A program made the translations under genes and the position numbers. From the NCBI GenBank assembly GCA_030704615.1, contig CM060734.1:42594001-42658000 (forward strand): a stretch of DNA of 64,000 nucleotides, read 5' to 3'. Below are positions 1-57,741 of this stretch, piece after piece (position 1 is the stretch's first letter; the number at the start of each line of letters is the position of its first letter). Origin of the DNA: Takakia lepidozioides (lineage: Eukaryota > Plantae > Bryophyta). The notes under the pieces are model-generated. The model did no database searches. It saw only the letters and a program-made list of their open reading frames with translations, and had not been told where the DNA came from.

Positions 1-3000
1 CAATCTTATCATTGCTGTTCTCCTTGAGAACACGGAGCTCACAGATGATCAAAAGAAGCAAATTCAAAAGGTACATCTAACTCAAATTAATTAAGTGTAC
101 TCAACATATGCATCAGAAGTAGGTAGACCAATGACGGTTGGGAGTTAGTGTCGGGTGCATAATCCAAGTGATCTAGGATTCAAAGTGTCCACAAAAGTAG
201 ACGTGAGGATGAAGAGACACCATAACTTACTCTTCCTTTAGGAGTCATCTTTCCTTCCTACTCGTACATTACTATCCAAGTAAGGTATTAATGTAAAATA
301 TTTCTTTAAATATTTTATATGATATTAAGTAATTTTTATATGGGATTAGAAATCAATTTCTACTATAAAATAATTATGTTCAACCTCAAAACAAATGTTA
401 CTTCGTTGTATTCGACAGCAAAAACAGCTCAAAATTTTACAAGTACATCCAAGAAGGACCAAGTCTAGAAGAGGAGATTGGCTGATTGGAGCAGTAGAAG
501 GGACCCAAGTTAGAGTCAAAAAATTATCTAACAAATTGAACGCCAATAAAGATGTGAAACGTATTAATATTCCTACAAGTCAAAAATCTCAAGAGGCTCA
601 TGAAGGACAAACTGATGGTATTCCCAGCACACGAGTCCCTCGTGCTAATGCTACTTTGTTTACAACTCCTTCAAGTGCCACCAACCTTGAAATTCCAGGT
701 ATTACAAAAGGAGAATGTATATGTATTTATATAGAAAAGGGAACACAACACATATTATGTGTCAAAAGGTATCCATGAGATTTTTATTTCTCATTTCAAA
801 AAAGCTTCTAGCTGGACCGCACGACCGTTCTTTCAATTTTTTTTAAAATACAAAATGCATTGTTGGTTTGTTCAAGCAAAACATGTACCTCTTGGCTCAG
901 GATTCCTATAAGTCTAATATTAGACTCTCAAAACTGCACTTCATTGAATGTCATGCCACTTACTCTCTATATAATATATATTCTCCAGATCTAAATAAGC
1001 CACAAGATATGGAGGACGATATTAAACAATCCAAACCAAGATCACCAGCTGGAAAAAAAGATACAACTAAATCAACATCATATTCAGCCCAATCTGTTCA
1101 AAGAAAACATCGGATCTCATTTATATTATCTGATTATGAAGGGATAGAAACAACATACAAGGAATCGCCATGGTACTTGTCTGATTCAAAATCCCTATTC
1201 ATATTTTCTTCAAATAGCACCTTGAGGAAGGTGCTTGCGATTATTGCTGAAAACATTTGGTATAATCGTTTTATGATGTGTTGTGTACTGGTTGCTATTG
1301 TTGCATCCATGAGAATTGATTCTATGGGTTATATCACCCCTGAGGGTTTGGCAAAATTTGACAAATTTCTTCTAGCGGTAAGTATTTTAATTTAACACTA
1401 GAACAAAACACATTGCATATTATATAATATTATAAAACTATAACTAATTAGTAATCAACTAATAAATTAAAAAAATGTCAAATGTACTTCAATTAGGACA
1501 AAGCGGTTGTGGCCTATTTATTTTGGCATCTTTGCTGACCATATCATGTGGGTATGGGGTTTAGCATATATGCCTCATGGCTCACATTATTCTTTACCCT
1601 TAGAAAAGACAGAGTCCCTGAATTGTGAGGTGTCGCTCCCAGTGGCAGGTTTCATTTTCAAATTAAAATAAAGGTTTCCTATAATATATTAGGTAATAAC
1701 ACATTATTAAAATTTATTATATATTCCAAAACTAAAAAAATGTTGGCATGTGTTTGTTAATATGCAGGTTTTCACATATGATGTTATATCAAAATGCATA
1801 GCATATGGGGCTATTTTTACACCTGAAGCATACCTTGGTGATCCATATAATATTATTGACGTTCTTAATCTTATATTTCATTTTATGAGCTTGAAAAATA
1901 GTCCGGAAAAATATGCTCACAATGCACACATTGTAAATGCAATGCGGACTACACGAGTCATACACCGCATTGCAGGTTTACGATTATTGGTTTCTACTGT
2001 CATCCGGACAATTCCTACAATAATTTCTATATTTTTTTTCAATCTCGTAATTTATTTCATATTTGCTGTCATTGGTGTGCAACACTTTCGAGATCGGTTT
2101 GCTTCATGTACAGATTTGACAGTCAGAAATCGTGCTCAGTGCGTTGGCAATTATCTTAATCAGAATGGGATTAATTCGCCCCGTGTTTGGAAAAATCCAC
2201 CTTTTCATTTTGATGATTTTGGTAATGCAATGTTATCATTATTTGTTTGTTCGACAACCGATAGTTGGCTCAATTATTTCCTTCACACTTCGATGGATAT
2301 CCCAAATAAACTCTATGACAATCCACGAGAAAATCACAGCACTGCTAATTCATTATATTTTATAGTATTCATAATAATTGGGACATGGCTAGTAGTGCGT
2401 ATGATGGTAGGTATGTTTATTGATCAATTTAGCATTATGTCGGGTTCTAAGCTCTTAACGGAGCGACAAAAGCTTTGGCGTGATTTGAATCGGATTATAC
2501 AACATATAACACCACGGCATGCGCCGCGAATACCCAAAGATTATGTTAGGTTGCAATGTCACAACATTGTACACTCGCGCACATTTAAGCTGTTCATAGT
2601 TTTTCTTATTATTCTCAACTATGCATATATCGCTTCTCAAAAGTTTGATTTAAAAATATCAAAGGTTTCACAAAGCATTGAATGTGCCTTTGTGGCCGCA
2701 TACTTGGTTGAGATTGGGTTAAAATTGTTGGGTATTCAGGTAAATATATATTGATACGGATTTATTTTCATAATATTATGCAATGAATGCATAATTTATT
2801 AATATATATAAGTAAATACTTAAATGACTGAGAGATGATCGTGGATTAAGTTATTTAGCAAATGTGTTGACATGGAAATGAGAAAATAATATATATCTTT
2901 AGTATTCTGTCAATCAACTCACTATATATATATAATGTATTATTTATTATTTTTTAGTTAAAAGGGGAGGTAGCCCTTATAAAACTTTATATATTTCAGA

Positions 3001-6000
3001 TAGTGAGAATGTACAGCCTCCTAGGATAATTATTTATTTGCAATCTGAATGAATGATCTAATCCAATGCAGTTTCTTGAGTTCATAAGCAATTGCTGGAA
3101 TATAGCTGAGCTCATTCTTGTAGTTTCATCAGCAGCATGTTTGTTTCCGAAGCCCTATTCGTCAACACAAGGAGTTGGACACATATTTATTCTTCTTAGA
3201 ATATTTCGTATCATTCGATATATTCCAGCATTGAGAACATTAGTGCAGACAATACTTATAAGTTTGCCATCATTAATATATGTCTTGATGTTCCTTGCTA
3301 TTTTCCTAGTGGAGGATGCTATGATATTTTTCCAAACATTTGCAGTTGGAAATGGACGATCTGGTTTACAATGTGTCAACCACGACGTACTCTTTGTTGA
3401 TTTTCCTACATCATTTGTGGTGATTTTTCAGGTATAAAAATTTCTATTGTTTATTCAAAAATAAATGATCATAATTGCATCCATAAGATATATTTTTAGC
3501 TCAAGATAAAATGAATAGATGATCACTCGCATTTAATCAACCATTTACATTTTCAATATTAGTTCTGTAAGTAGAGATCAACATTATAAAGTGTTTTAGT
3601 AATATTTAGATTGGCTGGAAAAAGATTTATAACACCACCGATACACTGGAGTCAAATATATCATGATGTGATTTAATTTGCAGATGACCACACTTGACAA
3701 CTGGTCATGTGTAATGACCGACCTTATGTTGTCACAACCCTATTGTATAGCTTCAAAGGGTTACACTGGATCATGTGGAAATTTTACTGCAGCTATAATT
3801 TATTTCATTGCCATTGTATATATTAATACACGTATCATTACAAATCTATTTATTGCCCAAATTATGGACACAATTACATTTGGATTATTGAATGAAAATG
3901 CGATAATCACACCCGATCATTTGATAAATTATCAAAAGCTTTGGTCTACAGAGAAATTCGATCCAAAGTAATTATGATCTTTAGCCAAACCAATTTTGCT
4001 AATAACTAAGAAAGATGACATTGAACTGTGTAGTTGTTGCTAACTTATATGCATTTATATTTGATGATTCTATAGCTAATATGGAGCTACTTTATTATTT
4101 TTAATTATCCCTATGATAAATTTAAGACAATATCAACAATAGCTTTTTTGTATCCTCCCTTTCCTTGGATACAATTCAAATAATTCTACAGCCAAATTTC
4201 ACTTTGTGAAAACCATTAGATGGCTAACTTTCAAACATCACATATGTATGAGGCAGGCCTGTGCATTGGCATGTGTGTCTTGAGTTCAAACTAGCGTTGG
4301 GAGGTTTTTTGATTCAGCTACAAATTCGCCCCGGAGGTTATTGAAAAAGTTATATGGATATATAACTGCGGTTCTTAAAAAAGACAAAGAACCGACAAAG
4401 GCTCATAACCGCAGCTTATGTAGTTTTGAAACCAGCCTGAAAACCGTCAAAGAACTGCCAAAGACCCACCGGTTATTTGATCAAACCGCCGGTTCTTTGA
4501 GGTTCTTACAATTAACCGGAACTGGCGGTTCTTTCCATGAAAAAAATCTGAAAAAATTGGAACCAGAGGTTCTTTGATTTTAAGATTTTGTAAAAACCAG
4601 AACCGGAGTGAAAGAAAATAGTTTCCGCCCAACACTGGTACAAACCACTGTGAAGCTGCCTTAGGGCTCTATCCCCTGTGCGACTCTATGCTCAGAAAGG
4701 GGAGTAATTTTCCGCCTTCCTTGGGATAAAAATAAATGATTTTTTTGAAACTTTGTAAATAAGCGGCGATTGTTTTCACAATGATAATCATCATATAGAA
4801 GCTAAGTGTGTGGATTGCCAGCCTGATGTTTGCAGATGTACAGGATACATAGGATTACACAAATTGCATGATTTTGTAGATGCTTTGGGTGCGCCTTTGG
4901 GTCAACGTAAAAATGCCCCAACCGCGTGGTAAGATTATCATACTTTTACTAAGTACCTTAGCTCAATATTAATATCATCAAACTTACCATGATGCAATTA
5001 GTAAAAGTGTTTTCTGTTTTTTGTTTTTGGAAAGGGGGGTTTTTTGCCTCTTTCAAAAAAAAAAAAAGTTGCTGGGCAGCCTGTGTTTCCTTGGAAAAAA
5101 AAAGAAAAAGAAAAAGTTAAATAGAAAACCCAACACAAGTTGGATGATGGGTTTTGCATGCATGCACAGGTACACAGGTCTGCAGTACCAAGTTCTCAAC
5201 TTTCATATCCCAGGCAAGGGGATTCCTTTTCGAAGATTGCTCGAGGCACTTGTTTTGCATAGAATTGGATCCCAGGTACACTGGGAAAACGTGATCAGAT
5301 CCCATCAAGAAGCTTGGGTGATGAGTTGTGTTGAGCTGTTGTCTGTGATTTGGCTGGTATCGTGTGGTGATCTAGTGTTGGAGCAGCTGCAGTTTGAGTA
5401 CGCAGTTACAATATCTTGGAGGTGTGTGACCCCGCATGGTGTTGTGTTGCAGGGACTTGAGCTGGGCCTTCGAATAGAAAGGGAGAAAGAGATGAAAGAC
5501 ATTTGTAGGACTGCTGCTGCAATCAAAATTCAAGCTGCTATGAGACGATTTCTGAACAAGAAGAAAGTTATTTTTCAACGCTCCCAGCCCAAGCCCCAGC
5601 CCAAACCCCGGCCGAAACCCAAAGCTCCTGTGATTGTAGTTCCCGAGCCGCCGAAGAAAGTATGCTAGTCTTAACTTGGAATGACTTGTCATTAAGTATA
5701 ATGTGGCCGCATAATTCTTGCTGGATGTAGACAATGGCCCTGACAATGCGTATCGCTGAAAACTCGATACGTAAGACTGAACTAGCTAACTCAACTGTTC
5801 TCATGATCAGCCGAAGACTCAGTGGACTGCCGAAAGCCACAGAAGACCTCTCGAAAAATCAGCTGCATCGCCACCAGCAACGACCGACACAAAGAAATTG
5901 GTCCAAGAGAAGAAAGGAGAGGAACCACGGCCAGCATCAGCGACCGACACAAGATTAGTCGAAGAGAAGAAAAGAAGTGAACCACCACCATCAACGACCG

Positions 6001-6278
6001 ACATAACAGATACAAACAAGTCGGTCGAAGTGAAGACAGGACGTGAATCACCACCAACTACGATCGACACTGCCGATACAACCAAGCTGGTTGAAGAGGG
6101 GGAAGGACGGGAGCCACTACCATCGACGACCGATACTGCAGATACAACCAAGACGTTGGTCTTAGAGAAGACAGAACGTGAACCATCACCATCGACAACG
6201 GCCACAGAAGATACAACCAAGCCGGTCGACGAGAAGGAAGGACCCGAACCAGATGGCTCTCCAGCAGGAGAAAAATGA
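1..6278 (+). CDS. Four-domain voltage-gated-superfamily cation channel (NALCN/Cch1-like), 3' part from DII-S6 to the C-terminus; 5' end lies outside the window
   Basis: Frame-consistent GT-AG exons: 1-70, ~419-698, 989-1377, 1768-2739, 3072-3431, 3684-3967, 4836-4928, 5170-5275, 5453-5659, 5811-6278. Motifs: NLIIAVLLENTELTDDQKK (DII S6); KSLFIFSSNSTLRK; PRVWKNPPFHFDDFGNAMLSLFVCSTTDSW (DIII pore); LLTERQKLWRDL (III-IV linker); LRIFRIIRYIPALR (S4); MTTLDNW (DIV pore); IQAAMRRF (IQ motif). The last exon is the least certain. Confidence 0.9.
110..262 (+). mobile_element. Decayed SINE copy in a channel intron (same family as 61022-61205)
   Basis: GAAGAGACACCATAACTTACTCTTCCTTTAGGAGTCATC matches the reverse complement of 61028-61080; B-box-like GGATTCAAA upstream. 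Confidence 0.6.
4292..4637. mobile_element. Non-autonomous hAT-type element (MITE) in a channel intron
   Basis: Imperfect TIRs TAGCGTTGGGAGG and CCGCCCAACACTG; 8-bp TSD GTTCAAAC/GTACAAAC; internal AACCG/CGGTT motifs. Confidence 0.7.
5865..6240 (+). repeat. Coding tandem repeat of ~6 units (18-21 aa), consensus about PSTTDTADTTKLVEEKEGREP
   Basis: Recurring CGACCGA(C/T)AC...GTCGAAGAG units every 54-63 bp in ORF 5898-6278. Confidence 0.85.
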
Positions 6279-7671
6279 TCAGGAAACCAGAAAACCTCTG
6301 ATCACGAGAGTCCCATGATACGTGTAGCGTAGAGGTCACTCCCTCCTGCTTTATGATTACTGATAGTATGGACCTAGCCGGTTTTTATCGCAGCAAATGA
6401 AGGTAAAGAAAATTCTTGATGGGCTAGTGGGGAGTAGAAATCAGGCCCAGAAGTAGAGCGGCTGACTCTTCTCTCGCTGACATCAGGAAACGGGGAGAGC
6501 CCTCCGGCCGCTTTGGACTTTGGACATGGCTTGCCTTTTTGGATTTTGTATGCGAGGGAGGCTGAATGTTCTTTTGCGCGCTGGGTTTTCTTACAAGAAA
6601 GTGCATTGAACTGAGTAGCCATGTGAGTTCACAATGAAACCTTAAGGGGGCGAGTAGTGTCATGAAGCAAACGAGGGTGCCGATGATCAGCCCAGCAAAG
6701 TGATTCGTAGTAAGGATGTCGTCTAAAGAAGCGACATTGGAATCACATCTTTCAGTCTTTTCCTTTTGCCGAGGTCCAAGTTGACATTGACACCGCATCT
6801 GCATCCAAGAGAAAGAGAGAGGGCAGAAATTTTAGTCTCCGGTGTCAATGTCTTATGGTTGGCCACTTTGCTCGACAACTTGTAACAGTTGCTTCAGTCC
6901 TTGACTATTTGTGTGTAGGGCCTTGGCGCTTTTCGCAGCAAAAGCGGATGCAGTGTGCTTAAGTTATTTGAAACTTGACTGCCCTTCTGCAAGATCCCTT
7001 AATGCAATGGATACATTCTGTAAGACCATTCTAGTGTAGCCAGGTACTCGAGCCTTGGAATGTGGAACAACTATCCTCCCCAGTTTGAAGTGCTCAGCAA
7101 TTTTGGTATTTGAAAGTGTCACTTAGAAATGGTACTGGAGACAGTATCCATTGGGGTGTTCAAATGAGTGTAAAGAAAGAAGTGATAGACAACTAGACAG
7201 GAGTGTGATGTCTCCTTGGATGTAGGATATATAACATTGGTCCTCACATAGTCCTGGTATAACTAACGAGGATCTCTGTACAGTGGTAAGAATCTTAGCA
7301 TATCTCACCACCCATCTGGCAATAATCTTTCGCGTAGTGAGTGCATGTTAATTATAAATTCTGGTGCATTGTTGTGTTTGCCAACAGCCCAGACAGTGTC
7401 AACAGCGGCTGGGATGATTGGACAACTCAAGCAGACTCCTGCCAGCACATCTTTATGGAGTTCCCAGCTGGAGGCACTGGCCACAAATGGCCTGTCCAGT
7501 CTACGCCTCTCCAGTCTAGCCTATGCTGCAAAAAGGACACACAGTAACTTGCATCACTTGAATCCTTCATACTAATCTGCTTGGGTCTATCTTGGCCGAC
7601 TCGATTAGGGGCTACAACAAATCACTGATGAGAGAAGTCACCCAGTTTTTAGTTATGCTTGCTGAACAAAT

Positions 7672-10600
7672 TTAAGAGCCAAGCCAAAGGTCATAGATCT
7701 GGCCTATATTTTCTTGGCTGACTCGCTTCAACCCTTCAAAATGCCGCTTGCTGCCTAAAAACTCAGCACGCCTGACTGGGACGTACCCGAGTTCTTCAGC
7801 CTCCTTAGAAGCATACATGCTTCGAAGCCGGTCTGCATGCTTGGAGTCTGTGTTAAGGGCTACCTCGATCTCTTCAGTAGGTAAGTACTCCTGCAAGTCA
7901 CACTTCGTGGTTTTGTCAATACCACTCTAATTCTAATGTGGCCCTGCAGTGGGGACTCAAAGCCCCACATATTCAACCCATCCTGGATGAGTGATAATCT
8001 CAATACGAACTCGTAGCCAGCAGTTCTGTTTGAAAATTATGCTTCACTATGGCCAGCTGCTTAAACACATGCGATATCTAGTCATCGACTGTTCTACCAC
8101 CAGTTTCCTAATGACCAGGTTTTTGAGACTGAGCTTAAATCTGTCACAGCACTTCCATATGGCTGACAAACATCTGGCTACAGAGAATGGAGTGTTGATC
8201 AAAGGCAGATATTGACATCATGTGACAGAGGGTGATGTTCATTCCAGCATTGGTACATGGCCAACTTTACGCACATTGTGGCTGTGATGGCACTGCCAGT
8301 CAAAACTGAGTGTGAAAAGGGTCAAGGGAAAGGGAGAAGAAGAAATCTATCACATGATGCAACATGGAGATGTAATCATCCCCTTAGTCACAAACTCACC
8401 TACTCTCTGGTCCAATTAAACAAGAACTTGTACCTGATAGAACGAGTAGATGTGGCCAATAATTTGCTCACTTGTGAACCCTTCTTCACTGAAAAAGGTT
8501 CGAGAAGATGGACCCATCTCTGAAAACCGGTCGATGGGAAATAAGATAGTCAAAAAGGTGCCTCTGAAAATGATCTCCTGTTTCTCACTGCAGACATTCA
8601 GCAACTGTCAGATGATACACTTGAAAAGTGAAAACATCATGTGTCCAAAGTGTCACTTTTTTGCCTGTAAGCAAGACTCGGGCTTTTGTGGCATCCACCT
8701 TTCCTCGAGCAAACTCAGTGTCACAGGTCCCTCTGTGAGGAAACTATGAATTTGTTTTCTTGTATTTGCAAACCACAAAAATCACCAATAGACGGGGACT
8801 TGTATGTCCAACATAAACTAGAAAGCAACAATACCATTATCCCAGCATCCAACAGTCCACCTTCAAAACAGAAGGCAGCAGCCCTTCAGGGTGAACTGAC
8901 ACCATAAGTTACGCTTGCTTTGGCAAGAGTCTTCCTACCCTCATCCCATGTTTTGATCTAGGCATAAAAGTCTGTCCAAATGATTCTCTCCTCCATCTTC
9001 TTAACAAAGATTGCAATACACCAAAGCCCTGGAACAGAAGTTGTTCCAACTCAGGCAATGAGCACCCAGCCTGACCTAGACCACTAAGCAGCATTGTGAT
9101 GAAGTATAAACTGGTAAGACAGCAGATGGGGCATATAGCTAGTACCTTTCTGTCATTGGCCTTGTGCATATCTCCCTCACAGACACCTCACTTTCGACAC
9201 CCCTACCATTGTTCCGAGAACAGACTATGCCTTGCTCACACGCTTCCATCTCTGGACCATTTTCAAGCATTGCCTCCTCTAAGGCATCGGTGTAGACCTG
9301 GGCAGCTAATGGCACGTCTGTAACCGACCAACATACTGTGTCCAAGAGGCTGACAGGTGTGATTGGACGAGGTAGCGTTCGGCAAGGCTGCAAGGATTTA
9401 GGCAGATGAACATTTATCAATCCAATTAGGACTAACTAGCATATAGCAAGAGGGAAAGGAGACAGAATAGATAAAATTACTCATGATGGAAACCTTCTGA
9501 AAATTAGAACTGTAAACAATCTAGCAACACTTTCAAACTGTACCTGCATACGGATGCCTCGCCTTCTTCGAACACCAGCCTTAGCAGCACTGGTCCTCGC
9601 CTGACGGTCCTGCAGTTGAGCCTCCCCTGTTCTCTCATTGCCAGGCTTGCAAAGCACCAGCAAACCATTCTGGTTACTAGCATTCTGGCCCACAACCAAC
9701 CACAACTTTGCTTCATTTGAACACCTAGTCTGCTATAGAAAAAGGACACAAATCATGTGGAATATGAAAGAGTCTGCTGCCTGGGGCTCTGTCTCTGCCT
9801 CTCTCAGGGAAGGAAATCAGTAGATATCCACAATTTGACTACCAGAAAATCCACAGCCACGTGTCAAATCTTTGTCAGGAGAGGTGTATTAGCATACTGA
9901 AAACAATATCATACTTTTCAGTATGGTGCAAATCCCAGACTTCAACTGGACACTAATCAACTATGCACAAATGTCTCTGCCTGGGTGTATGAATATGACA
10001 ATGCTTACCTAGTTTCAGATCCTGGTAGGTGAAAATGCTCAAGTGACTTCCAGAAGCATGCTATCTCATGGCAACTGTACCCTTGAGGTATGTAACAGTA
10101 CATCTCTCTCGCCTTCTCTTTACATCCCCTCTACTCCTAACTAACCGGAAAAAGGTAAAAGAAATGAGAATAACTCTAGAAAGAGTGAAATACCCCTGAG
10201 CAGCAATACACTAAACAAACATGGAGTCCTATTAATGTTCTTCAGAGTTCCCATGGCTATTCCATGTCTACAAATTGAGCACAGGGAAATAGTGGGTTCG
10301 GGAAGGAATTTAACACATACTGGGAAAGGGCGACTGCTGTTCCTCCCAGTGATCAAGAGATCTGCAAGGTTTCTTGCAAGATCTGCGGAATATTGCACAC
10401 TTCGTAATGGATGACCTTCCCGTGCAGACATTACCCACATTGGCTGCATGAGCCCACCTCATGCATGAGAAGCAATGTCGATCATAAACATGTAACCACT
10501 ACATGAATGTATGCATGTGACACAATCTATGGCTAAAATGAGGACACTTGACTGCCAACCTTAAGCCATCCCTTCCCATCATCTCTTCGAATGGCTGTGC

Positions 10601-13600
10601 AAGGGAAAACAGCAACCACTTCTCTGCGTACATCTTTCACAAGATTGTGCTACCACTAGCTTTTTATGTCCTAAGCCAGTAACATTTTAGCATAGGCGTG
10701 CCTTGAAGTGAAATCTAAGGTTGACAGTACCTAAAATATGCACTATCCTGAGACCTTGATTTTCAGCATTATGATGGGAAAATGTATGGGGACTCCAATT
10801 CACACCCAGTGAAAGTTTCCAACTAGAAGGTCTACTCACAGAAACAAGATTAATGTTGAGGCCAATATATTTGGCCAGGGAGTTCACTTCACAGACAACA
10901 TGGGTGGCATTGCTTCCCTTCGACCAGAACTCCACACAGGTGGCCCCCCATGTCTCAGCAGCTTCCTGCACCTGCATATTTCATGCAAGTGGAATAGGAT
11001 ATCTGAGAGGAGATTTGGTAACCAGTTTAAGGCACAACAAGGTGAGTATTTCTTGAACAAAGGTATCAAAATCCTAGAAATCAGACAAGTGGAGGTGCCA
11101 AGCAGACCCCGCATCTCTACTTTCATTGCTAAGCACCAGAGTCATCAACACTCTATACAGGCTTCTCAGATCTAGGGCTGTGCAGCAGGCCCTTACTCTA
11201 GAATGCGACATGAGGGAAGAAGCATCTCAGGCTTGAGCCTCACCTAATCGATATGCGTAAGCTTTGAGGACCCATGCAGTTTGTCCTAAGCCTGACAGCC
11301 AGAGGAGGAACATAATGACCAATGGAAAGACATTTCCTTAACTGAACCATGGTTGCAACACCCTTATTGCAGAGAAAAGAAAAGCACTTACAAGGACATG
11401 GGTGGGAAAAGATGAGGCAGAGAGAGGCAGACCAACTAACTGATTGATAGCCAACAAAGTTGAGTACTAAAACAGATTGTTACCTTTCCCTGCAACTCGC
11501 TTGACAGATCAGGATCTATATAGAAGCGTGCACCCGCAAGGACCGAGGTTGATGACTGCTTCACTGATCCATTAGCTTTTGGTGCTGACCTAAGACTTGG
11601 TTGCAGGCAGAGTGAACTGCCCACATCTCGGCCAGCTGGCAGGCATGAGTTCTGCCAGCTGCTTGTTGCAATAGCTTGGGAGAAATTCTCAACTGGCGTA
11701 GCTCCATTCACATGACTTCTCTGCACACTGTATAAGGACTCATCCAATCGCACTGCAAACCACCCAGACCACACCAAGAAATTCAGACCAGTGATATCAA
11801 AATTGGTACGAGCAACAGTACAAATTTAGGTTCGTGACCTGCTAGGTTGCAGGTTCTCTCTGCAACTCTCCCTACAAAAAGGGAAAAACTTCTGAACCGC
11901 ATGAAGCAGTCATTTTCTGTCCTTGTGAACAAAGAGAATACATGGAATTAATGATGATACATGAAGCAAAATTAATTCATCCCCCTCCCCTTCCCTTGGG
12001 CAGCCACACCGAAAGAACCCACCCATCTGGGATGCACAACAGGGCACCTTTGGAGTCTCTTGATTTGGATTTCTTGTTATTCTACTTCCCCATGGGCCCC
12101 TCTCTCACCATTATAGAGTTCCTCTCTCTAATCCCCCTTCCCCCTCACCCCCTCTCCTCCCGTTACCAAGAAGCTGTGAGAGCATCTAATATGCAAAGAG
12201 TAGATAGAAAGTGAAAAGTATGTGTAGTCTATCCCAGGGCCCCTGGGAAGGAAATGAGACCGTATTGCTTGGCAGAGTTGAGAAACCATGGGAGTGTGAC
12301 AACGAAGAGGCCTCTTCGCAATCCATGCTTTAAGGCATGTTCAAATTTCCGGCCACTACAGCTGTGCTGCAAGTCAAGGCATCACTCTTCTACATTACAT
12401 CTGGGCTTGTCACACAATGCTTTTACTAGTCCTGGAATATTGAAAAAACCACTGATTGAGAGTATTTTCCTGGTAGAGTAGAAACCTGTATAGAGGTCTG
12501 CGTATGAGAGAGTAATTAGATTGTCAATTAGCTTAGGGCCTAACCAAGCTTGTATTCAAACACAAAAATACCAGGAGCACCAAACGTTGAGTCTGGGGTT
12601 CCAGGAACGAGAGGCAATGTTAGTTGAGAGGCAGCCTTGGCATTTGAGTGCAAGCGATTCGAGGAATCACAAAAGGCTTCTGCATCAACCTGCCTTTCTC
12701 AAGTGGCCACTTCTTTCAGTTGATGAATCAATTCATGGATCTAATCTTACACCTGGCCCCAGAGCATTATCACACAACACCCTGGAAACTACCATATAGA
12801 TTTGCAGAAGGATTGTATACATTTTCAGACAGTTGAGATGGTAAATGACAGGCCCTTTGGTATGATGAGAATGTGACACATTGGCTTTCATTGTGGTTTG
12901 TACTGGATATTGGCTTCGTCAGCAAAGCAGGAAAGTTTGAAAAGATGACTGCAGTACGAGTATACTATCTGAATAGTATGCTCTCATTGTATTAAACAAA
13001 TGTGTAAACAATAGCAATGAGAGGATATTTGAACAACAAGATGGGTGCAATAAACATGGAGATCTGGGCTGTAGTGGCCCCCCATCCTCTCTGTCGTCAT
13101 CTGCACTTGCTTGCGGGCCTCTGCATCCAAGTAAAAGCCATAGACAGAAAGTTTGCAGAGACCCAGTGAGCTTCTCATTTGAGAGATACATACACATGCG
13201 ATCAGTCCAACCTCGTCCTTTGGTACTTCTTCAGAAAGCAAGCCCTTTTCTTATGTTGTGCTTGCATTGGTTGTAGGTTATGTGCATCTTCTTCAACAAC
13301 TCTTGTCAGTTGCCTACATGACATGTCAGATAGGAAGCTCTAGGATATTTGGCAGCGACAATTGAAATGTCCAAATCGTGAGGTTGGGATTGCACCAGAA
13401 CTCACGGCCAGGTGAATAATGTACAGCATCGGACAGAAACAATAGAGCAAAACAAAATACAGAAAGACAGACTGCTTGCTGAACAAAAGAGATATAGCCA
13501 ATACATCAAGTTCACATTCGCGTACCTTTAGAAAGACCGGTGACACAGATGACAAGCCCAGAAAATGGTTTTTCAGCACAATCCTCCGTCGACAGACGAG

Positions 13601-13682
13601 AGAGAGTCTGTAGAGCCAACGTGTGCTCACTGCTGGATATGGGGTCCAGTGACGCTGAAGGGGACGGTGAAGCCGTAAGCAT
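7672..13682 (-). CDS. Plant BRCT-domain-containing (DNA-repair-annotated) protein, multi-exon
   Basis: ATG at 13682 has an upstream in-frame TAG. Exons encode PFSGLVICVTGLSK|EARKQVQMTTERMGGHYSPDLHVYCTHLVVQ|SCSGRKFEHALKHG..VVTLPWF (BRCT1), then LAGARFYIDPDLS..ATHVVCE..PMWV (BRCT2), TILFPIDRFSEMGPSSRTFF and a final exon ending IYDLWLGS* at 7672. Confidence 0.85.
12364..13028 (-). other. U12-type (minor spliceosome) AT-AC intron
   Basis: 5' site CAA|ATATCCTC, branch-like TGCCTTGAC, 3' site GCAGCAC|AGC. Splicing restores the BRCT reading frame. Confidence 0.85.
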
Positions 13683-14652
13683 GGCGTTAGGCTACTACCA
13701 CGCAGCTGCTCGGAAACCCAAACTTTCGAGTCCCGGAACCTCATCTTTGTTCCAAACTAGTCCTTTCACCCCCGCTAATCTTGCCTGGAATTCTTGCCTC
13801 CCCCATTGATGCAGGCCCGTGTTTCAGTCTCTCCCTATGAACGTCTTCCAACCTTTTCTACCTCTATCTGGCACTTCAACATCTTCAGCGACTTCACCAT
13901 TTAATCTTACATTCCTTCCATTTCGATCCTTCCATTTTCTCCTGTGGCTCTAGATTTCACCCCCCCAAATCTGTCAGTTTCTGACCAGTCCCTCAGCTAC
14001 ACTGAATTCTTGCAACCCACAAAGACGAACATACCCGTATCCAACCATTCTAAGTCACGTGTATCCTCTCCGCAGCAACTTTGCAAGTAAAAAGAGTTTA
14101 CTCTCTCCCTCCCCCTCGCACACACTTACAAACCTCGTCATTATCTATCTGTCTGTCCACCACTTAACCACAATGTTTCCGAAGCTCACCCCAAAGAGGA
14201 AAGCAGACTCAGATTAAGCTTCCCCCTGCTCTTAATGCTCAGCGTTGGTTTATCTCTCTTGTGTTGCTCGGTATCGGCAATGCCTTGAGAGCCAGAATAC
14301 TTCGATTATCTTTGCAGAGCCAGTTCAAATTTGCTTCATGCTGAGATCAGCGCCATCTCAGAGCCAGAACGAACGAATCCCATCTTCTTCTTCTTACTTC
14401 GTTCGCAATCTCGTCGACGCCATGCGATCTTGCAGGGAGGGTGGAGCCAAGCAAGGCTCTTGTGCGTGGAGCCCACAGTCTCCTCGAGCAGCTGGGAGAT
14501 GACCATCTAACAAACGGTTCCGTTATAGATGATCGTTAACTAACATCTCGTTTACTAGCGGATTAACATATGGAGGAACAGGCCTTCTGCAAAGAAACGC
14601 CCACGCCCTGGCTCGTCGTGTTCTTCGCTGGCTGCCATCGAGGTTCGCAGCG
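13683..14652. promoter_or_regulatory. Divergent (possibly bidirectional) promoter/5'UTR region between the BRCT and importin genes
   Basis: Start codons are 970 bp apart in head-to-head orientation; the region is CpG-retaining with CT-rich tracts. Confidence 0.5.
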
Positions 14653-17600: not shown

Positions 17601-20600
17601 CATGGCTCCAGTTTCTGCATACAAGCTGTAAGACAGACCTGGTCAAAAAGAGAAAAATGAAATTAGACTTCGGTCTTTTGAACACAGGCCTGTTGGCAAA
17701 TAGGATAGCTCATTGCTGTGGGTTTGTACTGGAACCATGTAATCAGGTGGCATTGATTCTGTTCAGCTCATTGACAGAAACTATTGGTGACTTGCTTCGT
17801 CCTCATTTTGCGACTCTCCAAAGTGTGTTTGTGAGTGGTCTCAATGATCAACAAAGCAATCGCGTCCGTGTTGCTGCCCTCAAGTAAGTGATCTTGCACT
17901 TCAACACCAGTATTTTTCCCCTTACTGTGGTTAAAACCTCCATGGCATTAATGAGGTTTAGGATCTGAACTGCTCCTGAGGGTTATCCAGTTTGAAGAAT
18001 CTTTGTGTTAAGAAGTTCTTTGCCGTTATAAAGGCATGATCTGGAAAAATTGTGATGAAATTGTCTAGTCCAACTTCTCAATGTAACAATGTAAAATTTT
18101 TGGTGGTATGATTGGGTCAGCACTCCTTCATAGCTCTCAAACTGGCTGAGTCCTGAGGTGTCTTCCTCCTGTTGTCCATAACTCCAGGACTAATGGTCTA
18201 TTCGCACAGAGTGTTAGAGCACAAAAGTAGAGTTAAGTTAAGTACATGTTAAGTTAGGTGACATCAACTTCAACTTAACATTATGCACATGGTTATAAAA
18301 TGTTGGTTACCTTTAACTTCTCAGTTGAATTTCACGCTGTTTTAGGTTAATGGTAAATTATTTTGACTGTGAAATCTTAATGCCCACTAGTCATTTGCCT
18401 CATGTCATAGCTCAAACCATATGTTGTAAACAGCCGGTAATGTGCTCTTTGTCCAGCGCTTAAGCACGGGTCTCCTCTGTTAAATTTAAATAATAACTTC
18501 TATGTACGGTAAATGTTAAGATGACTCATGCTATCCCCATGGGTTAACTTCAAAACACAAAGGATTCCTAACATTGGCTAACATTAGATGTTAAATTAAC
18601 AGGTGACTTCTAAAATTATGTCACCTAACATATAGTGAGAACTAACTTAACGTTATATGATAACTGAAATTGATTGTGCGAGTAGGCCATAAGAGTGGTT
18701 AGGAGTGTCAAGCAATTTTAAACTGCAATACAGAGAGAATGAGAACAAAAAAGCTTTATAACGGCTGGCGGAGCTGGTGTCCTTTCCCAGTAAGGGGTAC
18801 GACCCTCTTTAAAGAGTGAACAGGAGGGTGTGATGGAGATTCTTCTTCTCACCTCTATAATTCTGTGATACACAGGGCTGTTGGAGCTCTCGTGGGCTAT
18901 ATTCAGACTGAACAAGAAGTGGTAAGTTCTACTTCCATCGCCCACCTAATCTTTTCCTCTTCTCCATTGAAATTCTGGGGAATTCCTAACATCTTCATGG
19001 AGTTAATTTGTACTTCCATTGAAGCATGCTGCATCTGTATATTACTTCAAGCACGACTCCGTGATTTCCTCTACATGTCTCCGCATTCTCTGGAGAAATG
19101 TACACATATCCACACACATACTCATAGCAGGGTTTATCGTAGCTTACATCAGCTTCTAGTAAGTTTTGCAGATTTTCTCCATGTGGGGGCCACCGGGCTA
19201 ATGATCTGCCAATTGTGGTTTGCCAAATTGGTTCATGTCTTGTGATTCCATCTTGCTCATCTGATGAATATGTATCCTACCAATTGCAGCTGATGTTTCG
19301 GGAGTTGATACCACCCATCTTAAATGTGTCGCGGATGTGTCTGGCCAACGGGGATGAGGACATAGCAATTTTGGCATTTGAAATTTTTGATGAGCTGGTT
19401 GAGTCACCAGCTCCACTACTGGGCCCCACCATCCCTGTCATTGTGCACTTTGCACTGGAGGTTTCCTCCAACAAGATCCTTGAAGCCAACACTCGCCACC
19501 AGGTTTCACTTTTTCCTTCTGTGCCTGCCTTGGACCCCATTTCCTCTGAATTTGCTCTCTCGCAGACTACAATCTCGGTAAATGGTTAATGAGTACTTGT
19601 CTTCCATGAACACGCAGATTTGTTCATCTGAGGGTTGTATCAGGATTGTGCCATCAGCTGTCATGATGAGATAATGCCTGCCCACACATCAAACTGATGT
19701 TTGATAGCTTGTACTAGCACAGAGGTTGAGTGCAGTCAGGTCTGGGCCTGGGAGGGTTGCTAGTTTCAAGAGAACGGTAACCATCAGTGGCACACACACT
19801 CTCTGAGCACTATAAGCCACCTTTACATGTACTTTTTCCCTCTTTGTGTTGTGTGGTAGGTAATCATCGATGGAAGTATGGGGTTCGGTTTGTCAAATAA
19901 AGGAGAGTTGTTTGAGCACTGTCTTTGGAGCTGTTCTTACAGGCAATCCAGATCATATCATGGCTATCGAAATACAAGCCCAAGACTCTGGTAAAACACA
20001 AACTGGTTGAACCAATCCTGGCAGTTATGTGCCCTATTTTGGCAGAGCCCGACACACGGGCACATGAAGATGATGTGGCAGCTGAGCGAGCGGCAGCTGA
20101 AGTTCTGGACACTATGGCCATGAGTCTCCCCAAAAAACATGTGTTCCCACCGGTCTTACACTTTTCAATCTCCAACTTTCAGAACCCAGATCCACATTAC
20201 CGAGATGCTGCAGTAATGGCATTGGGTGTGATCTCGGAGGGTTGTTTTGAAGTAATGAAGGCACGGCTGGAGGACATTCTGACACTGGTGTTGGAAGCAC
20301 TTAAGGATAAAGAGCAGGTACCCCAAAAATAGCCATTTTGGAGGGATGCAAGGCTGTGATTATCCTGGGAGGGTATGACTGTAGCACTAGAGATCTGTAT
20401 GTGATTGCATCAGTATCAGGGCTCTGTGCCTTCTTTTGAGGGGAGTCAAAAAGTGATTGTTGCGGTTACTGACCATTGTAAGTTGGAGTGCACAAGATTT
20501 CTCATATGTCTCTGATGCTGGAAAAACTGTTTGAAGGTGGTACGTGGGGCTGCAAGCTTTGCGCTGGGTCAATTTGCCGAGCATTTACTGCCTGAAATAA

Positions 20601-23600
20601 CTGAGCATTATGAGCGGATTTTGCCATGCATTTTTACAGTGCTTAGTGATTCCGTACCTGATGTCCAGGTACAGTTCTCCCCTGGTCAATGCTCTTCTCT
20701 CTAAGGCATTGGATGTCTTTAATTTCATGTGGCCCTCATCATAACCCGTCTATAGACTTGTAAGTCCTGTGGCAAAGGCTAAAAACATCGGACATTGTGA
20801 TAGAGAAGATTACGCAGCAGAAATGCTGAGCAACTTGAAAGCGTACATGTGCACTTTGTCCATGTTTGTGTCTGTTTGTAAATTTCCGAGCGGTTGTTTT
20901 TTGTAGGAGAAATCATACTATGCGTTGGCAGCATTTTGTGAGAATTTGAAAGAGGAGATATTGCCATATCTAGGGCCACTGATGGAGAAGTTGCTGGAAG
21001 CGCTGCAAAGCAGTCGCCGGGACCTACAGGAGACTTGCATGGTACCTAACTGACAACCCTGCCTTTTGCATGCGTGTATTGCAACATGTAACTTTGAGCA
21101 CGCCGGGATTCCCCATGCGTTCCAAAGAATGTAGCTACGTTGAAATGATCCTAGACTTGAAGAGCGTCGTTGAATCTCCAGTATATTCCTTGAGTGACTG
21201 AGGATGCCTTTTCTCACAATACCAATGGCTGTAGTCTGCAATCGGCTCAGCTGCTGCAGCGGCGGAGGCAGCATTTGTACCCTACACCCACAGCGTTTTG
21301 CACCTAATGCAAACCTTCATGGTTCTGACCAAAGATGAAGACTTGCCAGTTCGCGCGCGCGCCACGGAACTTGTAGGTATCATTGGCATGGCTGTGGGAC
21401 GCAGTGTCATTGAGCCAGCTCTTCCGGGCTTCATTGAAGCTGCACTTGAGGTTAATAGCTTACACTTCAACACTGTAGAAACTTCTCCATCTTCGGGCTA
21501 TGTTTGTTGTATTTAATGTGGATCTTGTTCTCTGTCTTTTTCTTTTGCCCCCTCGGCGGTCCCTGTGGATGTTATAGAGTTTCTTTCTGTTGTTCCCTTA
21601 ACTAGCTGCAAGTTTTGAAGGTAAAAGGATGTAGTTCATAACTCAAAAATTGCTACATTTCACCTAATCTGATGCTTATCTTTATGCTGCATTGTCCTGA
21701 AATGGTTCGGTTCTATGGAAAGCTTGGGGAAAGAAGATAGGGTCCAGCTAGATTTATAGGTCGCTGTCTTTGATGTATGACGTGGCTGTGCACATGCAGG
21801 GGTTTACGTTAGACTTCAGTGAGCTGCGGGAGTATACTCATGGATTCTTCAGTAACGTGGCAGAAATTTTGGAGGAAGGCTTGACTCCGGTATATTGACT
21901 TTTCTGTTCTTCCATCTCTCACTAGCAATGACATGAGGAAGCTGTATGTTTTTCCGTAGTTCCCTCACAACCTAGAGCGCTGTCACAGTGACATGGTTCT
22001 TTGTCTCTTAGCCTTCTTCTGTAGGCCTACATTGCAGAAATCCATTCTGTGCGGGTGGGAGGTTTGCACAAATATGGAGTTTTGCATGCATGAGCATATT
22101 ACATTGAACTTGAGACCTTGAAAGGTTGATAGTTCTCTCTTCCTCTGAATACTACTGATATCATCTTTGTTATGTGGATTGTGAAGTATCTACCACGCTT
22201 AGTGCCATTAGCATTGGCATCTTGCAATCTGGACGATGGGACGTCGTTTGACTTTGCCGATTCAGATGGTGACAACAACCTGGTCAATGGAATTGGGGGC
22301 TTCTCCTCTGATGAGGACGAGGACACAGACAACAAACGAGTTCGTAATTTCAGTGTACGGACAGGTGTCCTGGATGAGAAGGCAGCTGCAACACAAGCCC
22401 TTGGCTTGTATGCCCTCCACACCAAGAATTCTTTTATGCCGTATCATTTTTCAGGCATCTTAATATAATCATATGCCTTAAGTCAAGATTAGGTCGTTGA
22501 TTTCGTGAGCTCGATGAGACGTGTCTCTCTTCATACATTTTCACATAAAGGGAATAAATTCTCCTGGATGCAAGCCTTCGCAGGGACCCTTGCATAGCTG
22601 GATGCAGGTTTGTTAGTATGCCTTGAGAAGACTTACGCATGGTACCAAGCATTAGCCTCTTAGGCCCCATCCTTGTATCCTGGTTTCATCTTTAGGAGTA
22701 TGATTCTGAAGGTTTCAATGGATAGCTCAATTTTCCAGCACTATGGTCACTCTCTAGGTGGTCCTGGGTTTGAACCGAATTGCACCTTTGTGGAGGGTAT
22801 ATCTCACCTTAGTGTCTATGACATCTAACAACATACCTAGCTTTAGCGGTCGCTAAGGACTTGGCACAAGTTGTTATGGTGTCCAAAGTGGCAGCCATAA
22901 AGTGCCCACTTCCTTACAGGAGCAGGAGCTGTGCCGGTGCAAGGACCCACTCAATTTTAGTTTGTGCCAGTGTTAATTTCTGTGTTTACAATTTATGTTG
23001 TCGTACAACTTGAATGTCACCCGACAGATCTGAGAGGACACTGTTTTACATTCCATTATTCTTTCAGATTGTTTCTTAACAGCAAGCAGTTATTTGGAAG
23101 AGACATTGAAGGTGCTGATGCAGCATGTGGGCTACTTTCATGAGGATGTGCGACTCCAAGCTGTCATTGCCTTTCAGCGTACGCTTTCCCAGAACACACT
23201 TTTTGTAGTGTGACTTTTGAAACTTGCAGCCTGCAAACAACCATGGAAATCGGCTTAGATTGGCTGAAGTCTGGGAAATAGCCTCATCAGCGATCCTGTT
23301 TTTGGCACCAAGTTTTTTACTTCAACGGCAGCCATTATCACTTTCACTCACATGCAAACGTTGACCATGCAAGTGTGTGCACCAGTGCATGAATTTTCCT
23401 TATGCTTTGTATTGTACTGTTCTGGGCTTAGTAAAGAAAGGGATCTAGATCTCAGTCGGTTTCATACTTGGCAGGTAAATCTGGGATTAATTGCTGAGAA
23501 ATGAACTTTGTGATTAGTTTTGGTTGGAGGATGGTACGTGGTACTGCTTTGAGACTGATAAGCATTATGTGCTCCTTCTACAGATGTATTTACAGCAACA

Positions 23601-27951: not shown

Positions 27952-28145
27952 ATCTTGCTGGCCATCGATAAGGGATTGAGAAGCTGGCTCCCATGAGCAG
28001 GATTCCATCTGATGATCGTCGGTACTAGTGATTGCTATGCCAATTCCGTTTCTTCAGATGCTCGCTGTGCTCTGCCGTCATCTCATTCACATTATCAGTA
28101 GCTTGGCTTGAAAATCGTTTACAGATTACTCTCCGTCATCAGGCT

Positions 28146-52020: not shown

Positions 52021-52149
52021 TTTTGTTAAAAAGTCCTACCCCAAATAGGCTAGAATTGTTTTATTAGAAATTTTAGTATTTAATTCTGAAAAAATAGAAA
52101 ACCATTTTTTATTTCTAATAATTAGAGATTTTTGAATTTGGCACCTCTA

Positions 52150-52318
52150 GATTATGGGTTTACAAAGCCTTCTTTGTGGCTATTGGTCTCTATGTCGATA
52201 ACCTAATTTTGGTGTCTGGAATAACCTCAAGTTCTTGAATGAGTCTAAAGCTATGATGGCCCAAGAAGTTTCTATGATAGATAATGGTAATATTGCCTAT
52301 TTCCTCGGCATCCAGCTG
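52150..52318 (+). mobile_element. Inverted copia RT fragment
   Basis: Reverse complement of ~51000-51160 (GLYVD.LILVS motif). Confidence 0.7.
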
Positions 52319-52832
52319 CGAAGGAATCTTGCTACTCAGGGGTAGTTGCAGGTTATGGTGGACCAAAAATTGTATAACATGGCAGTTTCTGCAGTGACCT
52401 CCATTCATGGTGCCTTTTCTAGTAAAATCACAACTCAATTTCATACAAGTTTATACGGTCTAAGATTTGTAACTACAGTAGAGACATACTCCAATTTTAT
52501 TATTATTAAAAGGATCATCTATGAAAGAGCTATGGACTCTTAAAGTTGAATCTTATGGACTGCAGTGTTACACATGAAAAACCATATGGACTAAAAAAAA
52601 AATTGTTTGATGGGAGGAAGTGGTCAAATTTATGATTTGTTTCTAGTATCTGACCAAGCTTGTTAGCATTTACATAGCAAAAAAGAAAACACATTAGGGG
52701 TGTCATTTTTGAAAGCTACCCAAATGCACTTTTATATGGACTAAAAACATCAAGTGAGAGGTATGGACTAATTTATACTAAACACTAGGCCCAAACTCAG
52801 GACCTATTTTTCCTAATGTACATTATCCTCAT
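52319..52832. mobile_element. MITE of the ATGGACT-motif family (right end uncertain)
   Basis: Left end GGGGTAGTTGCAGG resembles the TIRs at 54937 and 56716; repeated ATGGACT. Confidence 0.5.
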
Positions 52833-54936: not shown

Positions 54937-55599
54937 GGGTAATTGCAAAGTAGAGTGGACCAAAACCGGCAAATCGTGAGTACATAAAGAGTACATAAAT
55001 GAGGATGTGACGAATCCTCAACCATCGATCTTGACCGTCTATTATTGACTGTTAAAACCAAGATTTTCAAATTGCGATAATATCAATTCACAAATATTTT
55101 TTGAAATTTGATCATACTCAACTGTGCATTTATGGTGAATGCGTCTATTGAAAAAAGTTTTGTTATTTCAAAAGAATTTAGTCATGAAGGACTCTATGAA
55201 AATAGCTATTTTTTAGGCTAAAAATAGTACATAATTTTTTTTAACTTCCTATTTTGAATGATAGTTTTCATTCCAGATTCCTCATTCTCCAAAGCAAGTT
55301 TGAGAGAGTCCCTTTTCTTGACTTTGTTCTAATTCATATAAAATGGTCCATAACGTCTTTTTTTTACGGACAGTGACAATTTTTTATGGATTTTTTAAAA
55401 GTCCATAGCATCTAGAGATTCTGGTTTTTGATAATTAGATTTAAAAGTGTGAAAGTATATGTAGATGAGCCTCTATATGTTAGTCCCTTTTTATTGATGG
55501 CATTGTTATGTAGGAGTATGATAATTTACCACTATTCTATGTCTGGAAAAAAAAGTGTTGTGACAGCAAAAAATGGACACTGTAGGCTACAATCACCCC
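54937..55599. mobile_element. PIF/Harbinger-like MITE inserted in the copia protease region
   Basis: Ends GGGTAATTGCAAAG and GGCTACAATCACCCC; 3-bp TSD ATC. Removing it restores MGDDGQHQAI on the minus strand. Confidence 0.7.
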
Positions 55600-57474: not shown

Positions 57475-57741
57475 ATATGATCAATATTTGAGCAATATTA
57501 CAAGAGATAGAGATTGAATTCTCTACATGTTGATGTATTAAAATGTCAGAGCGAGAGAGAACACTTAAAGGTTCTACCTAAAGGCATAGTGTGAACAGTC
57601 ATAACCCTAAGTACTAGCACAACTGTCTAACTACCTGCACCAATTGAATACACTTTAGAGTATCATGAATATATATGTGCAATGCTTGGTGATGATGAAT
57701 GAGGAACTTTATTACATGATGTTGATGAAATCTCTCCAACA

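What the first reader, a model, noticed from the sequence alone, without database searches (positions are those of the whole stretch)
1..6278. Apparently intact NALCN/Cch1-like four-domain cation channel in a land-plant gene neighbourhood
Seen: a cleanly spliced, stop-free 4x6TM channel 3' half, contiguous with typical plant genes. Established: angiosperms lack four-domain Nav/Cav/NALCN channels, while green algae such as Chlamydomonas keep them and use one in the flagellum. Inference: several segments resemble NALCN/fungal Cch1 more than canonical Cav/Nav, from my recollection of those proteins: IAVLLENTELTDDQKK after DII-S6, PRVWKNPPFHFDDFGNAMLSLF, the III-IV linker GSKLLTERQKLWRDL, and QPYC..SCGNFTAAIIYF. 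This may be a little-characterised excitability or Ca2+ entry system retained in plants with swimming sperm. Homologues may already be annotated in seed-free plants; I cannot check this.
Basis: partly seen in the sequence, partly recalled or inferred. Interest (0 to 1): 0.9.

Follow-up and report, generated by a model that had tools for sequence, protein, structure and literature searches.

The report
Moss four-domain Cch1/NALCN-related calcium channel
This moss gene encodes an animal-style four-domain calcium channel, of a kind often said to be missing from land plants, which I found only in plant groups that still have swimming sperm, so it is a testable candidate for how plant sperm let calcium in.

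Summary
Window 1-5668 is the cleanly spliced, stop-free 3' half (end of domain II to IQ tail) of a four-domain channel in a moss genome. Its introns match Sphagnum and depth is even, so it is not a chimera. Corrections: one extra intron (5276-5452); exon 5811-6278 has no homologue support; domains I-II lie outside the window.

Orthologues occur in Sphagnum, Physcomitrium, Marchantia (Mp2g23520), Riccia, lycophytes, ferns and Ginkgo; none were found in conifers or angiosperms. My tree places the clade with Chloropicon/Pycnococcus channels inside the broad NALCN/Cch1-containing clade (100/100) but outside NALCN+Cch1 proper; grouping with Cav1/2, Cav3 or Nav is rejected. A published 2025 tree agrees.

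The family filter is EEDD, S4 charges are reduced, and a published search found no plant FAM155/UNC79/UNC80. Best reading: a weakly voltage-dependent, calmodulin-modulated Ca2+-entry channel of the male germline or sperm (about 55%). The Marchantia orthologue is near-silent in thallus and rises with germline genes.

The family is already in databases and in that tree, but I found no functional paper. The scan had noted only this same stretch before.

The parts
1..70 (+). Exon (5' end outside window): end of DII-S6 and the clade-A signature helix
   Evidence: (65-83% identity to land-plant homologues)
419..698 (+). Exon: II-III linker, proximal conserved part
989..1377 (+). Exon: distal II-III linker and DIII S1-S2
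1768..2739 (+). Exon: DIII S2-S6 (S4 with two Arg; filter Asp in STTDSW), III-IV linker, DIV S1-S2
3072..3431 (+). Exon: DIV S3-S5 (S4 with three Arg) and turret
3684..3967 (+). Exon: DIV P-loop (filter Asp in TTLDNW), Cys loop, S6, start of C-terminal domain
4143..4608 (.). High-copy host repeats inside intron 6, at the GC step
   Evidence: depth up to about 6500 vs about 39
4836..4928 (+). Exon: EF-hand-like part of the C-terminal domain
   Evidence: EF-hand-like label by resemblance to Cav/Nav tails (own knowledge)
5170..5275 (+). Exon: pre-IQ region
5276..5452 (+). In-frame, stop-free 177-nt intron hidden in the long ORF
   Evidence: same intron in Sphagnum L004 and in L003
5453..5668 (+). 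Exon: IQ motif and Pro/Lys-rich tail; donor at 5660 or stop at 5666-5668
5811..6278 (+). Possible last exon: open, in-phase Thr/Glu/Pro-rich tandem-repeat tail; no homologue, uncertain

Best explanation
This is the moss orthologue of a green-lineage family of four-domain cation channels (Marchantia Mp2g23520, Physcomitrium XP_024366358), inherited vertically from green algae. It belongs to the broad 'clade A' that also holds NALCN and Cch1, but outside NALCN/Cch1 proper. SHOWN: pore domains III and IV, Asp at both visible filter positions, few S4 charges, no Nav-type insert in the III-IV linker, an IQ tail, long-term purifying selection, and the phylogenetic position. INFERRED from orthologues: domains I-II with Glu/Glu, giving EEDD. 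INFERRED from channel biophysics: an all-acidic ring makes it Ca2+-permeable; 11-14 S4 charges in the family (5 in this gene's DIII+DIV, against 9-11 in Cav/Nav) make gating weakly voltage-dependent, as in NALCN/Cch1; Ca2+-calmodulin on the IQ motif gives feedback. INFERRED function: it is switched on in the male germline and supplies Ca2+ influx across the sperm or flagellar membrane for swimming control and chemotactic turning, apparently without FAM155/UNC79/UNC80, and it was lost together with motile sperm.
For: Splicing and domains. Orthologues in Sphagnum (58%), Marchantia (46%), Riccia, Diphasiastrum, Selaginella, Ceratopteris, Adiantum and Ginkgo. No conifer or angiosperm hit; Arabidopsis and Amborella were screened in PMC12412391 and are absent from its channel tree. 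Tree (PMSF LG+C10): exon 4 + Sphagnum 99.3/100, land plants 100/100, plus green algae 100/100, broad clade with NALCN/Cch1 100/100. AU test rejects grouping with Cav3 (p 3.5e-9), Cav1/2 (0.002) and Nav (1.5e-6). Published tree agrees. Filters. S4 charges. dN about 0.35 with saturated dS, and no excess change at conserved columns. Marchantia Mp2g23520 is 0-0.01 TPM in wild-type thallus and rises (log2FC 4.8 and 9.8) in a mutant that ectopically expresses MpBNB, MpGLID, MpDUO1 and MpPKAR (PMC13190419).
Against: There are no direct antheridium or sperm expression data and no RNA run for this genome. The Marchantia signal is low (about 1 TPM) and comes from one mutant with a non-clonal background. 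The channel was not found in the Cycas revoluta sperm supplementary tables nor among my hits for cycads, hornworts or Chara; absence calls rest on word-limited searches. The closest algal relatives include coccoid algae (Chloropicon, Pycnococcus, Prasinoderma; little or no flagellate stage, own knowledge). Unchecked scan notes say several flagellar genes in this genome are decaying while this half-gene is intact. Ion selectivity and gating are inferred from sequence only.
Confidence: 0.55

Rival explanations
1. It works like fungal Cch1: a general stress or low-Ca2+ entry channel, or a contributor to excitability in vegetative cells or spores, with the match to motile sperm coincidental or secondary.
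For: Clade-A affinity, and Cch1 scores best of the opisthokont groups on exons 1, 4 and 6. The algal sister group includes coccoid species. Selaginella has several paralogues. The 3' half is intact although flagellar genes are reported decaying in this genome (unchecked).
Against: The Marchantia orthologue is near zero in vegetative thallus. No angiosperm or conifer orthologue was found. No plant Mid1/FAM155 partner appears in the published search.
Confidence: 0.2
2. In this genome the gene is a recently relaxed or dying copy whose lesion lies in domains I-II, outside the window.
For: The 5' half is unseen. Scan notes of decaying DNAH1, CFAP70, dynein-2, CYB5D1 and CFAP298 (unchecked). A few odd residues, such as an Asp in DIV-S5 and Gly to Ser at the end of DIII-S6. 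No RNA evidence.
Against: About 2.8 kb of coding sequence and eight introns are intact. The terminal branch is not long (0.33 vs 0.30 for Sphagnum). Departures at conserved columns are no more frequent than in Sphagnum (9 vs 9 of 84).
Confidence: 0.15
3. It is a steeply voltage-gated T-type (Cav3)-like or Chlamydomonas CAV2-like channel, as RefSeq names and the EEDD filter suggest.
For: The EEDD filter equals that of Cav3. Best PDB sequence and fold hits are Cav1 and other Cav/Nav chains rather than NALCN. IQ motif.
Against: AU tests reject Cav3 and Cav1/2 grouping. S4 charges are 11-14 vs 19-20. The long NALCN branch depresses raw scores. No Chlamydomonas channel is in the land-plant clade.
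Confidence: 0.08
4. Contaminant or chimeric contig.
For: GC step from 0.33 to 0.45 at 4-5 kb.
Against: Equal depth on both sides, host repeats in the intron, intron positions shared with Sphagnum, moss placement. The Sphagnum gene is also AT-rich.
Confidence: 0.02

Closest known systems
Land-plant four-domain channels: Physcomitrium XP_024366358, Marchantia Mp2g23520/MARPO_0069s0001 and MARPO_0016s0197, Selaginella XP_024521493 and paralogues, Sphagnum, Ceratopteris KP509_11G019800, Ginkgo Gb_09885
   Same: Orthologous: 41-58% identity in exon 4, same intron positions as Sphagnum, same D/D filter, IQ tail. They form a 100/100/1 clade with Prasinoderma in the PMC12412391 tree.
   Different: Automatically named 'T-/L-/R-type Cav', 'Nav' or 'hypothetical'. 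I found no paper describing their function in the library. I recall conference-level work on Marchantia sperm voltage-gated channels ('MpVICSRF'); this is memory only and was not found. Mosses and Marchantia Mp2g23520 keep fewer gating charges in DIII-S4 than most lycophyte, fern and Ginkgo copies.
Fungal Cch1 and animal NALCN
   Same: Same broad clade (100/100); shared post-DII-S6 helix, PRVWxNP turret, III-IV linker style and reduced S4 charge.
   Different: Outside the NALCN+Cch1 clade (98.6/100), and the sister position is only weakly supported (88.7/77). Filter EEDD vs EEEE (jellyfish NALCN used here), EEKE (vertebrate, own knowledge) or NEEE/QDEE. No FAM155/Mid1, UNC79 or UNC80 reported for plants.
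Chloropicon, Pycnococcus and Prasinoderma four-domain channels (UniRef name 'Calcium-channel protein CCH1')
   Same: Sister group of the land-plant clade (100/100); best non-plant score on every exon.
   Different: Filter EEDE and more S4 charges, 14-16.
Animal Cav3 (T-type) and Chlamydomonas CAV2
   Same: EEDD filter (Cav3); CAV2 is the functional precedent for flagellar Ca2+ entry in green cells (PMC8318260).
   Different: Cav3 grouping rejected; Cav3 has about 20 S4 charges; no Chlamydomonas channel lies in the land-plant clade of the published tree.

Membership tests
Four-domain (4x6TM) Cav/Nav/NALCN superfamily | Tandem 6TM Ion_trans repeats with P-loops in one chain (DIII, DIV, end of DII) | tested here: met
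Four-domain (4x6TM) Cav/Nav/NALCN superfamily | Domains I and II present and intact in this gene | not testable with these tools
   Upstream of the window; look-ups found nothing. Orthologues have four domains.
Land-plant clade of four-domain channels | Phylogenetic placement, shared intron positions, D/D filter in DIII/DIV | tested here: met
Clade A (broad NALCN/Cch1-containing clade, PMC12412391) | Groups with NALCN/Cch1 to the exclusion of Cav1/2, Cav3 and Nav | tested here: met
   100/100; alternatives rejected
NALCN/Cch1 sensu stricto | Nested within or orthologous to NALCN+Cch1 | tested here: not met
   NALCN+Cch1 form a clade without plants, 98.6/100. AU rejects plants+NALCN (p 0.025) but not plants+Cch1 (p 0.12). 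Only one NALCN row was available.
NALCN/Cch1 sensu stricto | Filter EEKE/EEEE/EKEE (NALCN) or N/Q-E/D-E-E (Cch1) | tested here: not met
   D and D at DIII/DIV here; EEDD in orthologues
NALCN/Cch1 sensu stricto | Reduced S4 gating charge | tested here: met
   DIII 2, DIV 3; family 11-14 vs NALCN/Cch1 10-12 and Cav/Nav 19-20
NALCN/Cch1 sensu stricto | Partners FAM155/Mid1 (and UNC79/UNC80) in the genome | not testable with these tools
   Genome not searchable. No Marchantia, Physcomitrium or Selaginella entry in the paper's partner files; the authors warn that divergent homologues can be missed.
NALCN/Cch1 sensu stricto | Leak-type, weakly voltage-dependent current | not testable with these tools
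   needs electrophysiology
Cav3 (T-type) | EEDD filter | tested here: met
   (DI/DII from orthologues)
Cav3 (T-type) | Monophyly with Cav3 and fully charged S4 segments | tested here: not met
   AU p 3.5e-9
Cav1/Cav2 (HVA) | EEEE filter and monophyly with Cav1/2 | tested here: not met
   AU p 0.002. An IQ motif is present.
Chlamydomonas CAV2-type flagellar channel | Orthology to CAV2 (Cre16.g665050) | not tested
   No CAV2 sequence was in hand. No Chlamydomonas protein lies in the land-plant/Prasinoderma/Rhodelphis clade of the published tree.

The most novel reading that the evidence does not exclude
All land plants with swimming sperm keep a dedicated, functionally undescribed NALCN/Cch1-related four-domain Ca2+ channel that works without FAM155/UNC79/UNC80 and is the main Ca2+ gate for sperm steering: a plant counterpart of CatSper drawn from a different branch of the superfamily, lost together with flagella.
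Probability: 0.35. Interest if true: 0.8.

Novelty: new member of a known kind. Interest (0 to 1): 0.52.

Why it matters
Several papers state that embryophytes lack four-domain channels (PMC5824947, PMC6259924, PMC4030171). This gene and its orthologues from mosses to Ginkgo show that the loss happened only within seed plants. The mechanism of Ca2+ signalling in land-plant sperm chemotaxis is described as largely unexplored (10.1101/2025.04.26.650577), and the family gives one- or two-gene knock-out targets in Physcomitrium and Marchantia. A clade-A pore that may work without FAM155/UNC79/UNC80 would also be a useful comparator for NALCN/Cch1 gating. The score is tempered because the orthologues are already annotated and placed in a 2025 tree, this copy adds little beyond them, and Marchantia work may already exist.

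Tried and rejected
Exon DNA was pooled once, for base-composition counts only.

Fetching the upstream half through exact-protein look-ups failed. No RNA run holds the locus. The treekit C20 mixture run did not finish on one CPU and was replaced by IQ-TREE PMSF C10 on 37 rows x 826 columns; 43 rows of the 80-row set were left out (near-duplicates, fragments, long branches). Support labels printed are shifted by re-rooting; one search has the correct ones. The constrained trees for the AU test used a fast search.

Raw similarity (PDB phmmer and Foldseek favour Cav1) was rejected as a guide to ancestry because NALCN is a long branch. The AlphaFold model of exon 4 (pTM 0.50) only confirms the fold. 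The chimera/contaminant reading was rejected. CpG depletion as a cause of the low GC was not seen (CpG o/e 0.73 in exons 1-6 vs about 0.4 in neighbours).

Paper searches for the gene ids, 'VICSRF' and related terms found nothing. Edel 2017, Verret 2010 and Meyberg 2020 are not held. Supplements of the Koshimizu, DUO1 and Cycas papers lacked the gene.
Full report
Observation. The window opens inside a coding exon. Nine exons (<1-70, 419-698, 989-1377, 1768-2739, 3072-3431, 3684-3967, 4836-4928, 5170-5275, 5453-5659) are GT-AG bounded, in phase and stop-free. They encode the end of DII-S6, the II-III linker, DIII, DIV, an EF-hand-like C-terminal domain and an IQ motif. The long ORF at 5021-5668 hides a 177-nt in-frame intron; the same intron, and all others, occur at the same positions in the Sphagnum gene. 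Domains I-II are upstream and could not be retrieved.

Not an artefact. GC rises from about 0.33 to 0.45 across intron 6. However, depth is the same on both sides in two source runs, the intron carries high-copy host repeats, exons on both sides map collinearly to single plant proteins, and the Sphagnum orthologue also lies in AT-rich DNA. The neighbours are a BRCT-type gene, an importin-beta-like gene, an FAD oxidoreductase and copia elements. The genome is a moss: exon 4 groups with Sphagnum at 99.3/100. About 5,085 windows of 64 kb give roughly 325 Mb, which matches my memory of the Takakia lepidozioides assembly; that identification is an untested inference.

Distribution. Exon 4 finds relatives in Sphagnum (58%), Marchantia (two genes, 46%), Riccia, Diphasiastrum, Selaginella, Ceratopteris, Adiantum and Ginkgo (41%), then Chloropicon and Pycnococcus. 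No conifer, gnetophyte or angiosperm protein appeared in three name-bearing searches covering about 400-3300 aa; these searches are word-limited, so the absence is suggestive only. Independently, PMC12412391 screened Arabidopsis and Amborella and neither is in its four-domain tree, whereas Physcomitrium, Marchantia and Selaginella are. Cycads, hornworts and charophytes with sperm were not seen among my hits either, so the match to motile sperm is incomplete. A contiguous, intron-free Logan contig of a fern-like homologue (L002) is probably a transcript, which suggests the family is expressed.

Phylogeny. Raw scores favour Cav1 over NALCN (E 3e-55 vs 7e-21), but NALCN is a long branch. With a jellyfish NALCN and fungal Cch1s included, an LG+G4 tree of 80 rows and a PMSF LG+C10 tree of 37 rows agree. 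In the PMSF tree: land plants 100/100; land plants plus green algae 100/100; these plus NALCN/Cch1 plus three protist or unnamed channels 100/100; NALCN+Cch1 without plants 98.6/100; green clade as direct sister of NALCN/Cch1 only 88.7/77. AU tests reject grouping with Cav3, Cav1/2, Nav or NALCN alone, but not with Cch1 alone. The published tree puts the same plant proteins with Prasinoderma (100/100/1) and Rhodelphis inside its 'clade A', outside NALCN/Cch1 proper, with no Chlamydomonas member in that subclade. Majority residues of the green clade are shared exclusively with NALCN/Cch1 at 18 of 293 conserved columns, against 16/798 for Nav, 11/621 for Cav1/2 and 4/695 for Cav3.

Functional anatomy. 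The filter is Asp in DIII and Asp in DIV; full-length land-plant orthologues are EEDD (EDDD in Ceratopteris), algal relatives EEDE, Cch1 NEEE or QDEE. By established pore chemistry an all-acidic ring implies Ca2+ permeation, and the match to Cav3 is convergent given. Canonical S4 positions carry 2 charges in DIII and 3 in DIV here; whole-protein totals are 11-14 for land plants, 10-12 for NALCN/Cch1 and 19-20 for Cav/Nav, implying shallow voltage dependence. The III-IV linker lacks the Nav insert. The IQ exon is conserved in Sphagnum and Marchantia. Constraint is long-standing: dN about 0.35 with dS saturated, and no more departures at conserved columns than in Sphagnum. A few odd residues and very recent relaxation cannot be excluded.

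Biological role. Direct data are lacking. Indirect: in Marchantia, Mp2g23520 is at 0-0.01 TPM in wild-type thallus and is induced (log2FC 9.8 and 4.8, to about 1 TPM) in swi3a/b-oe males that ectopically express MpBNB, MpGLID, MpDUO1, MpPKAR and a radial-spoke gene (PMC13190419). With the distribution and the precedent of CAV2 in Chlamydomonas flagella, the best reading is a male-germline Ca2+-entry channel for sperm motility or chemotaxis (0.55). Rivals: a Cch1-like general Ca2+ entry role (0.2), helped by the coccoid algal relatives; a dying copy in this genome (0.15), prompted by unchecked scan notes of decaying flagellar genes; a steeply gated T-type-like channel (0.08); an artefact (0.02). 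If flagellar decay here is real and old, retention of this gene would argue for a non-sperm role; if recent, an intact 2.8 kb says little.

Prior knowledge and novelty. Channel reviews state that embryophytes lack these channels, yet orthologues carry automatic Cav/Nav names in RefSeq and sit undiscussed in a 2025 tree. That paper's FAM155, UNC79 and UNC80 files have no Marchantia, Physcomitrium or Selaginella entry. I found no functional paper in the library, though I recall, unverified, work on Marchantia sperm voltage-gated channels. Verdict: a real gene, a new member of a known but apparently uncharacterised family. It probably works like NALCN/Cch1 in gating but is not a member of NALCN/Cch1 proper. 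Interest 0.52.

Noticed in passing
window 1-4100 vs 4800-6300: The channel's 5' exons and introns are AT-rich (exon GC 0.36, GC3 about 0.3) with little CpG depletion (o/e 0.63-0.73), unlike neighbouring genes (GC about 0.45, CpG o/e about 0.4); the Sphagnum orthologue is also in an AT-rich island. Cause unexplained.
   Followed up: partly
window 5276-5452: A 177-nt intron that is in frame and stop-free; retention would insert 59 residues before the IQ exon.
   Followed up: partly
window 5870-6243: 57- and 66-nt tandem repeats coding a Thr/Glu/Pro-rich tail; the Marchantia orthologue also ends in unrelated Pro-rich repeats.
   Followed up: partly
window 4143-4608: High-copy repeats in intron 6 (depth up to about 6500 at 4143-4225); family not identified.
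   Followed up: no
window about 7700-13700, - strand: Multi-exon BRCT-domain gene convergent with the channel (read from the sequence; Pfam on two single ORFs gave no hit).
   Followed up: no
window about 19900-25400 and 28000-31000, + strand: Importin-beta-like HEAT-repeat gene and DAO-type FAD oxidoreductase gene.
   Followed up: partly
window 50400-60700: Several decayed Ty1/copia fragments (integrase, RT and RNase H-like ORFs).
   Followed up: no
L004:26642-32424: The Sphagnum troendelagicum annotation (P0177) stops at the end of exon 6, but the EF-hand-like, pre-IQ and IQ exons are present downstream; the database model is truncated.
   Followed up: yes
whole genome (scan notes s1-481832, s1-460860, s1-488835, s1-474586): Several flagellar genes are reported as decaying in this genome; if true, it is a natural test of which 'sperm' genes are dispensable.
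   Followed up: no
P0082, P0063, P0120, P0124: Unnamed protist or algal four-domain channels with unusual filters (AGRE, AGKD, AGKE); P0082 falls in the broad NALCN/Cch1-containing clade.
   Followed up: no
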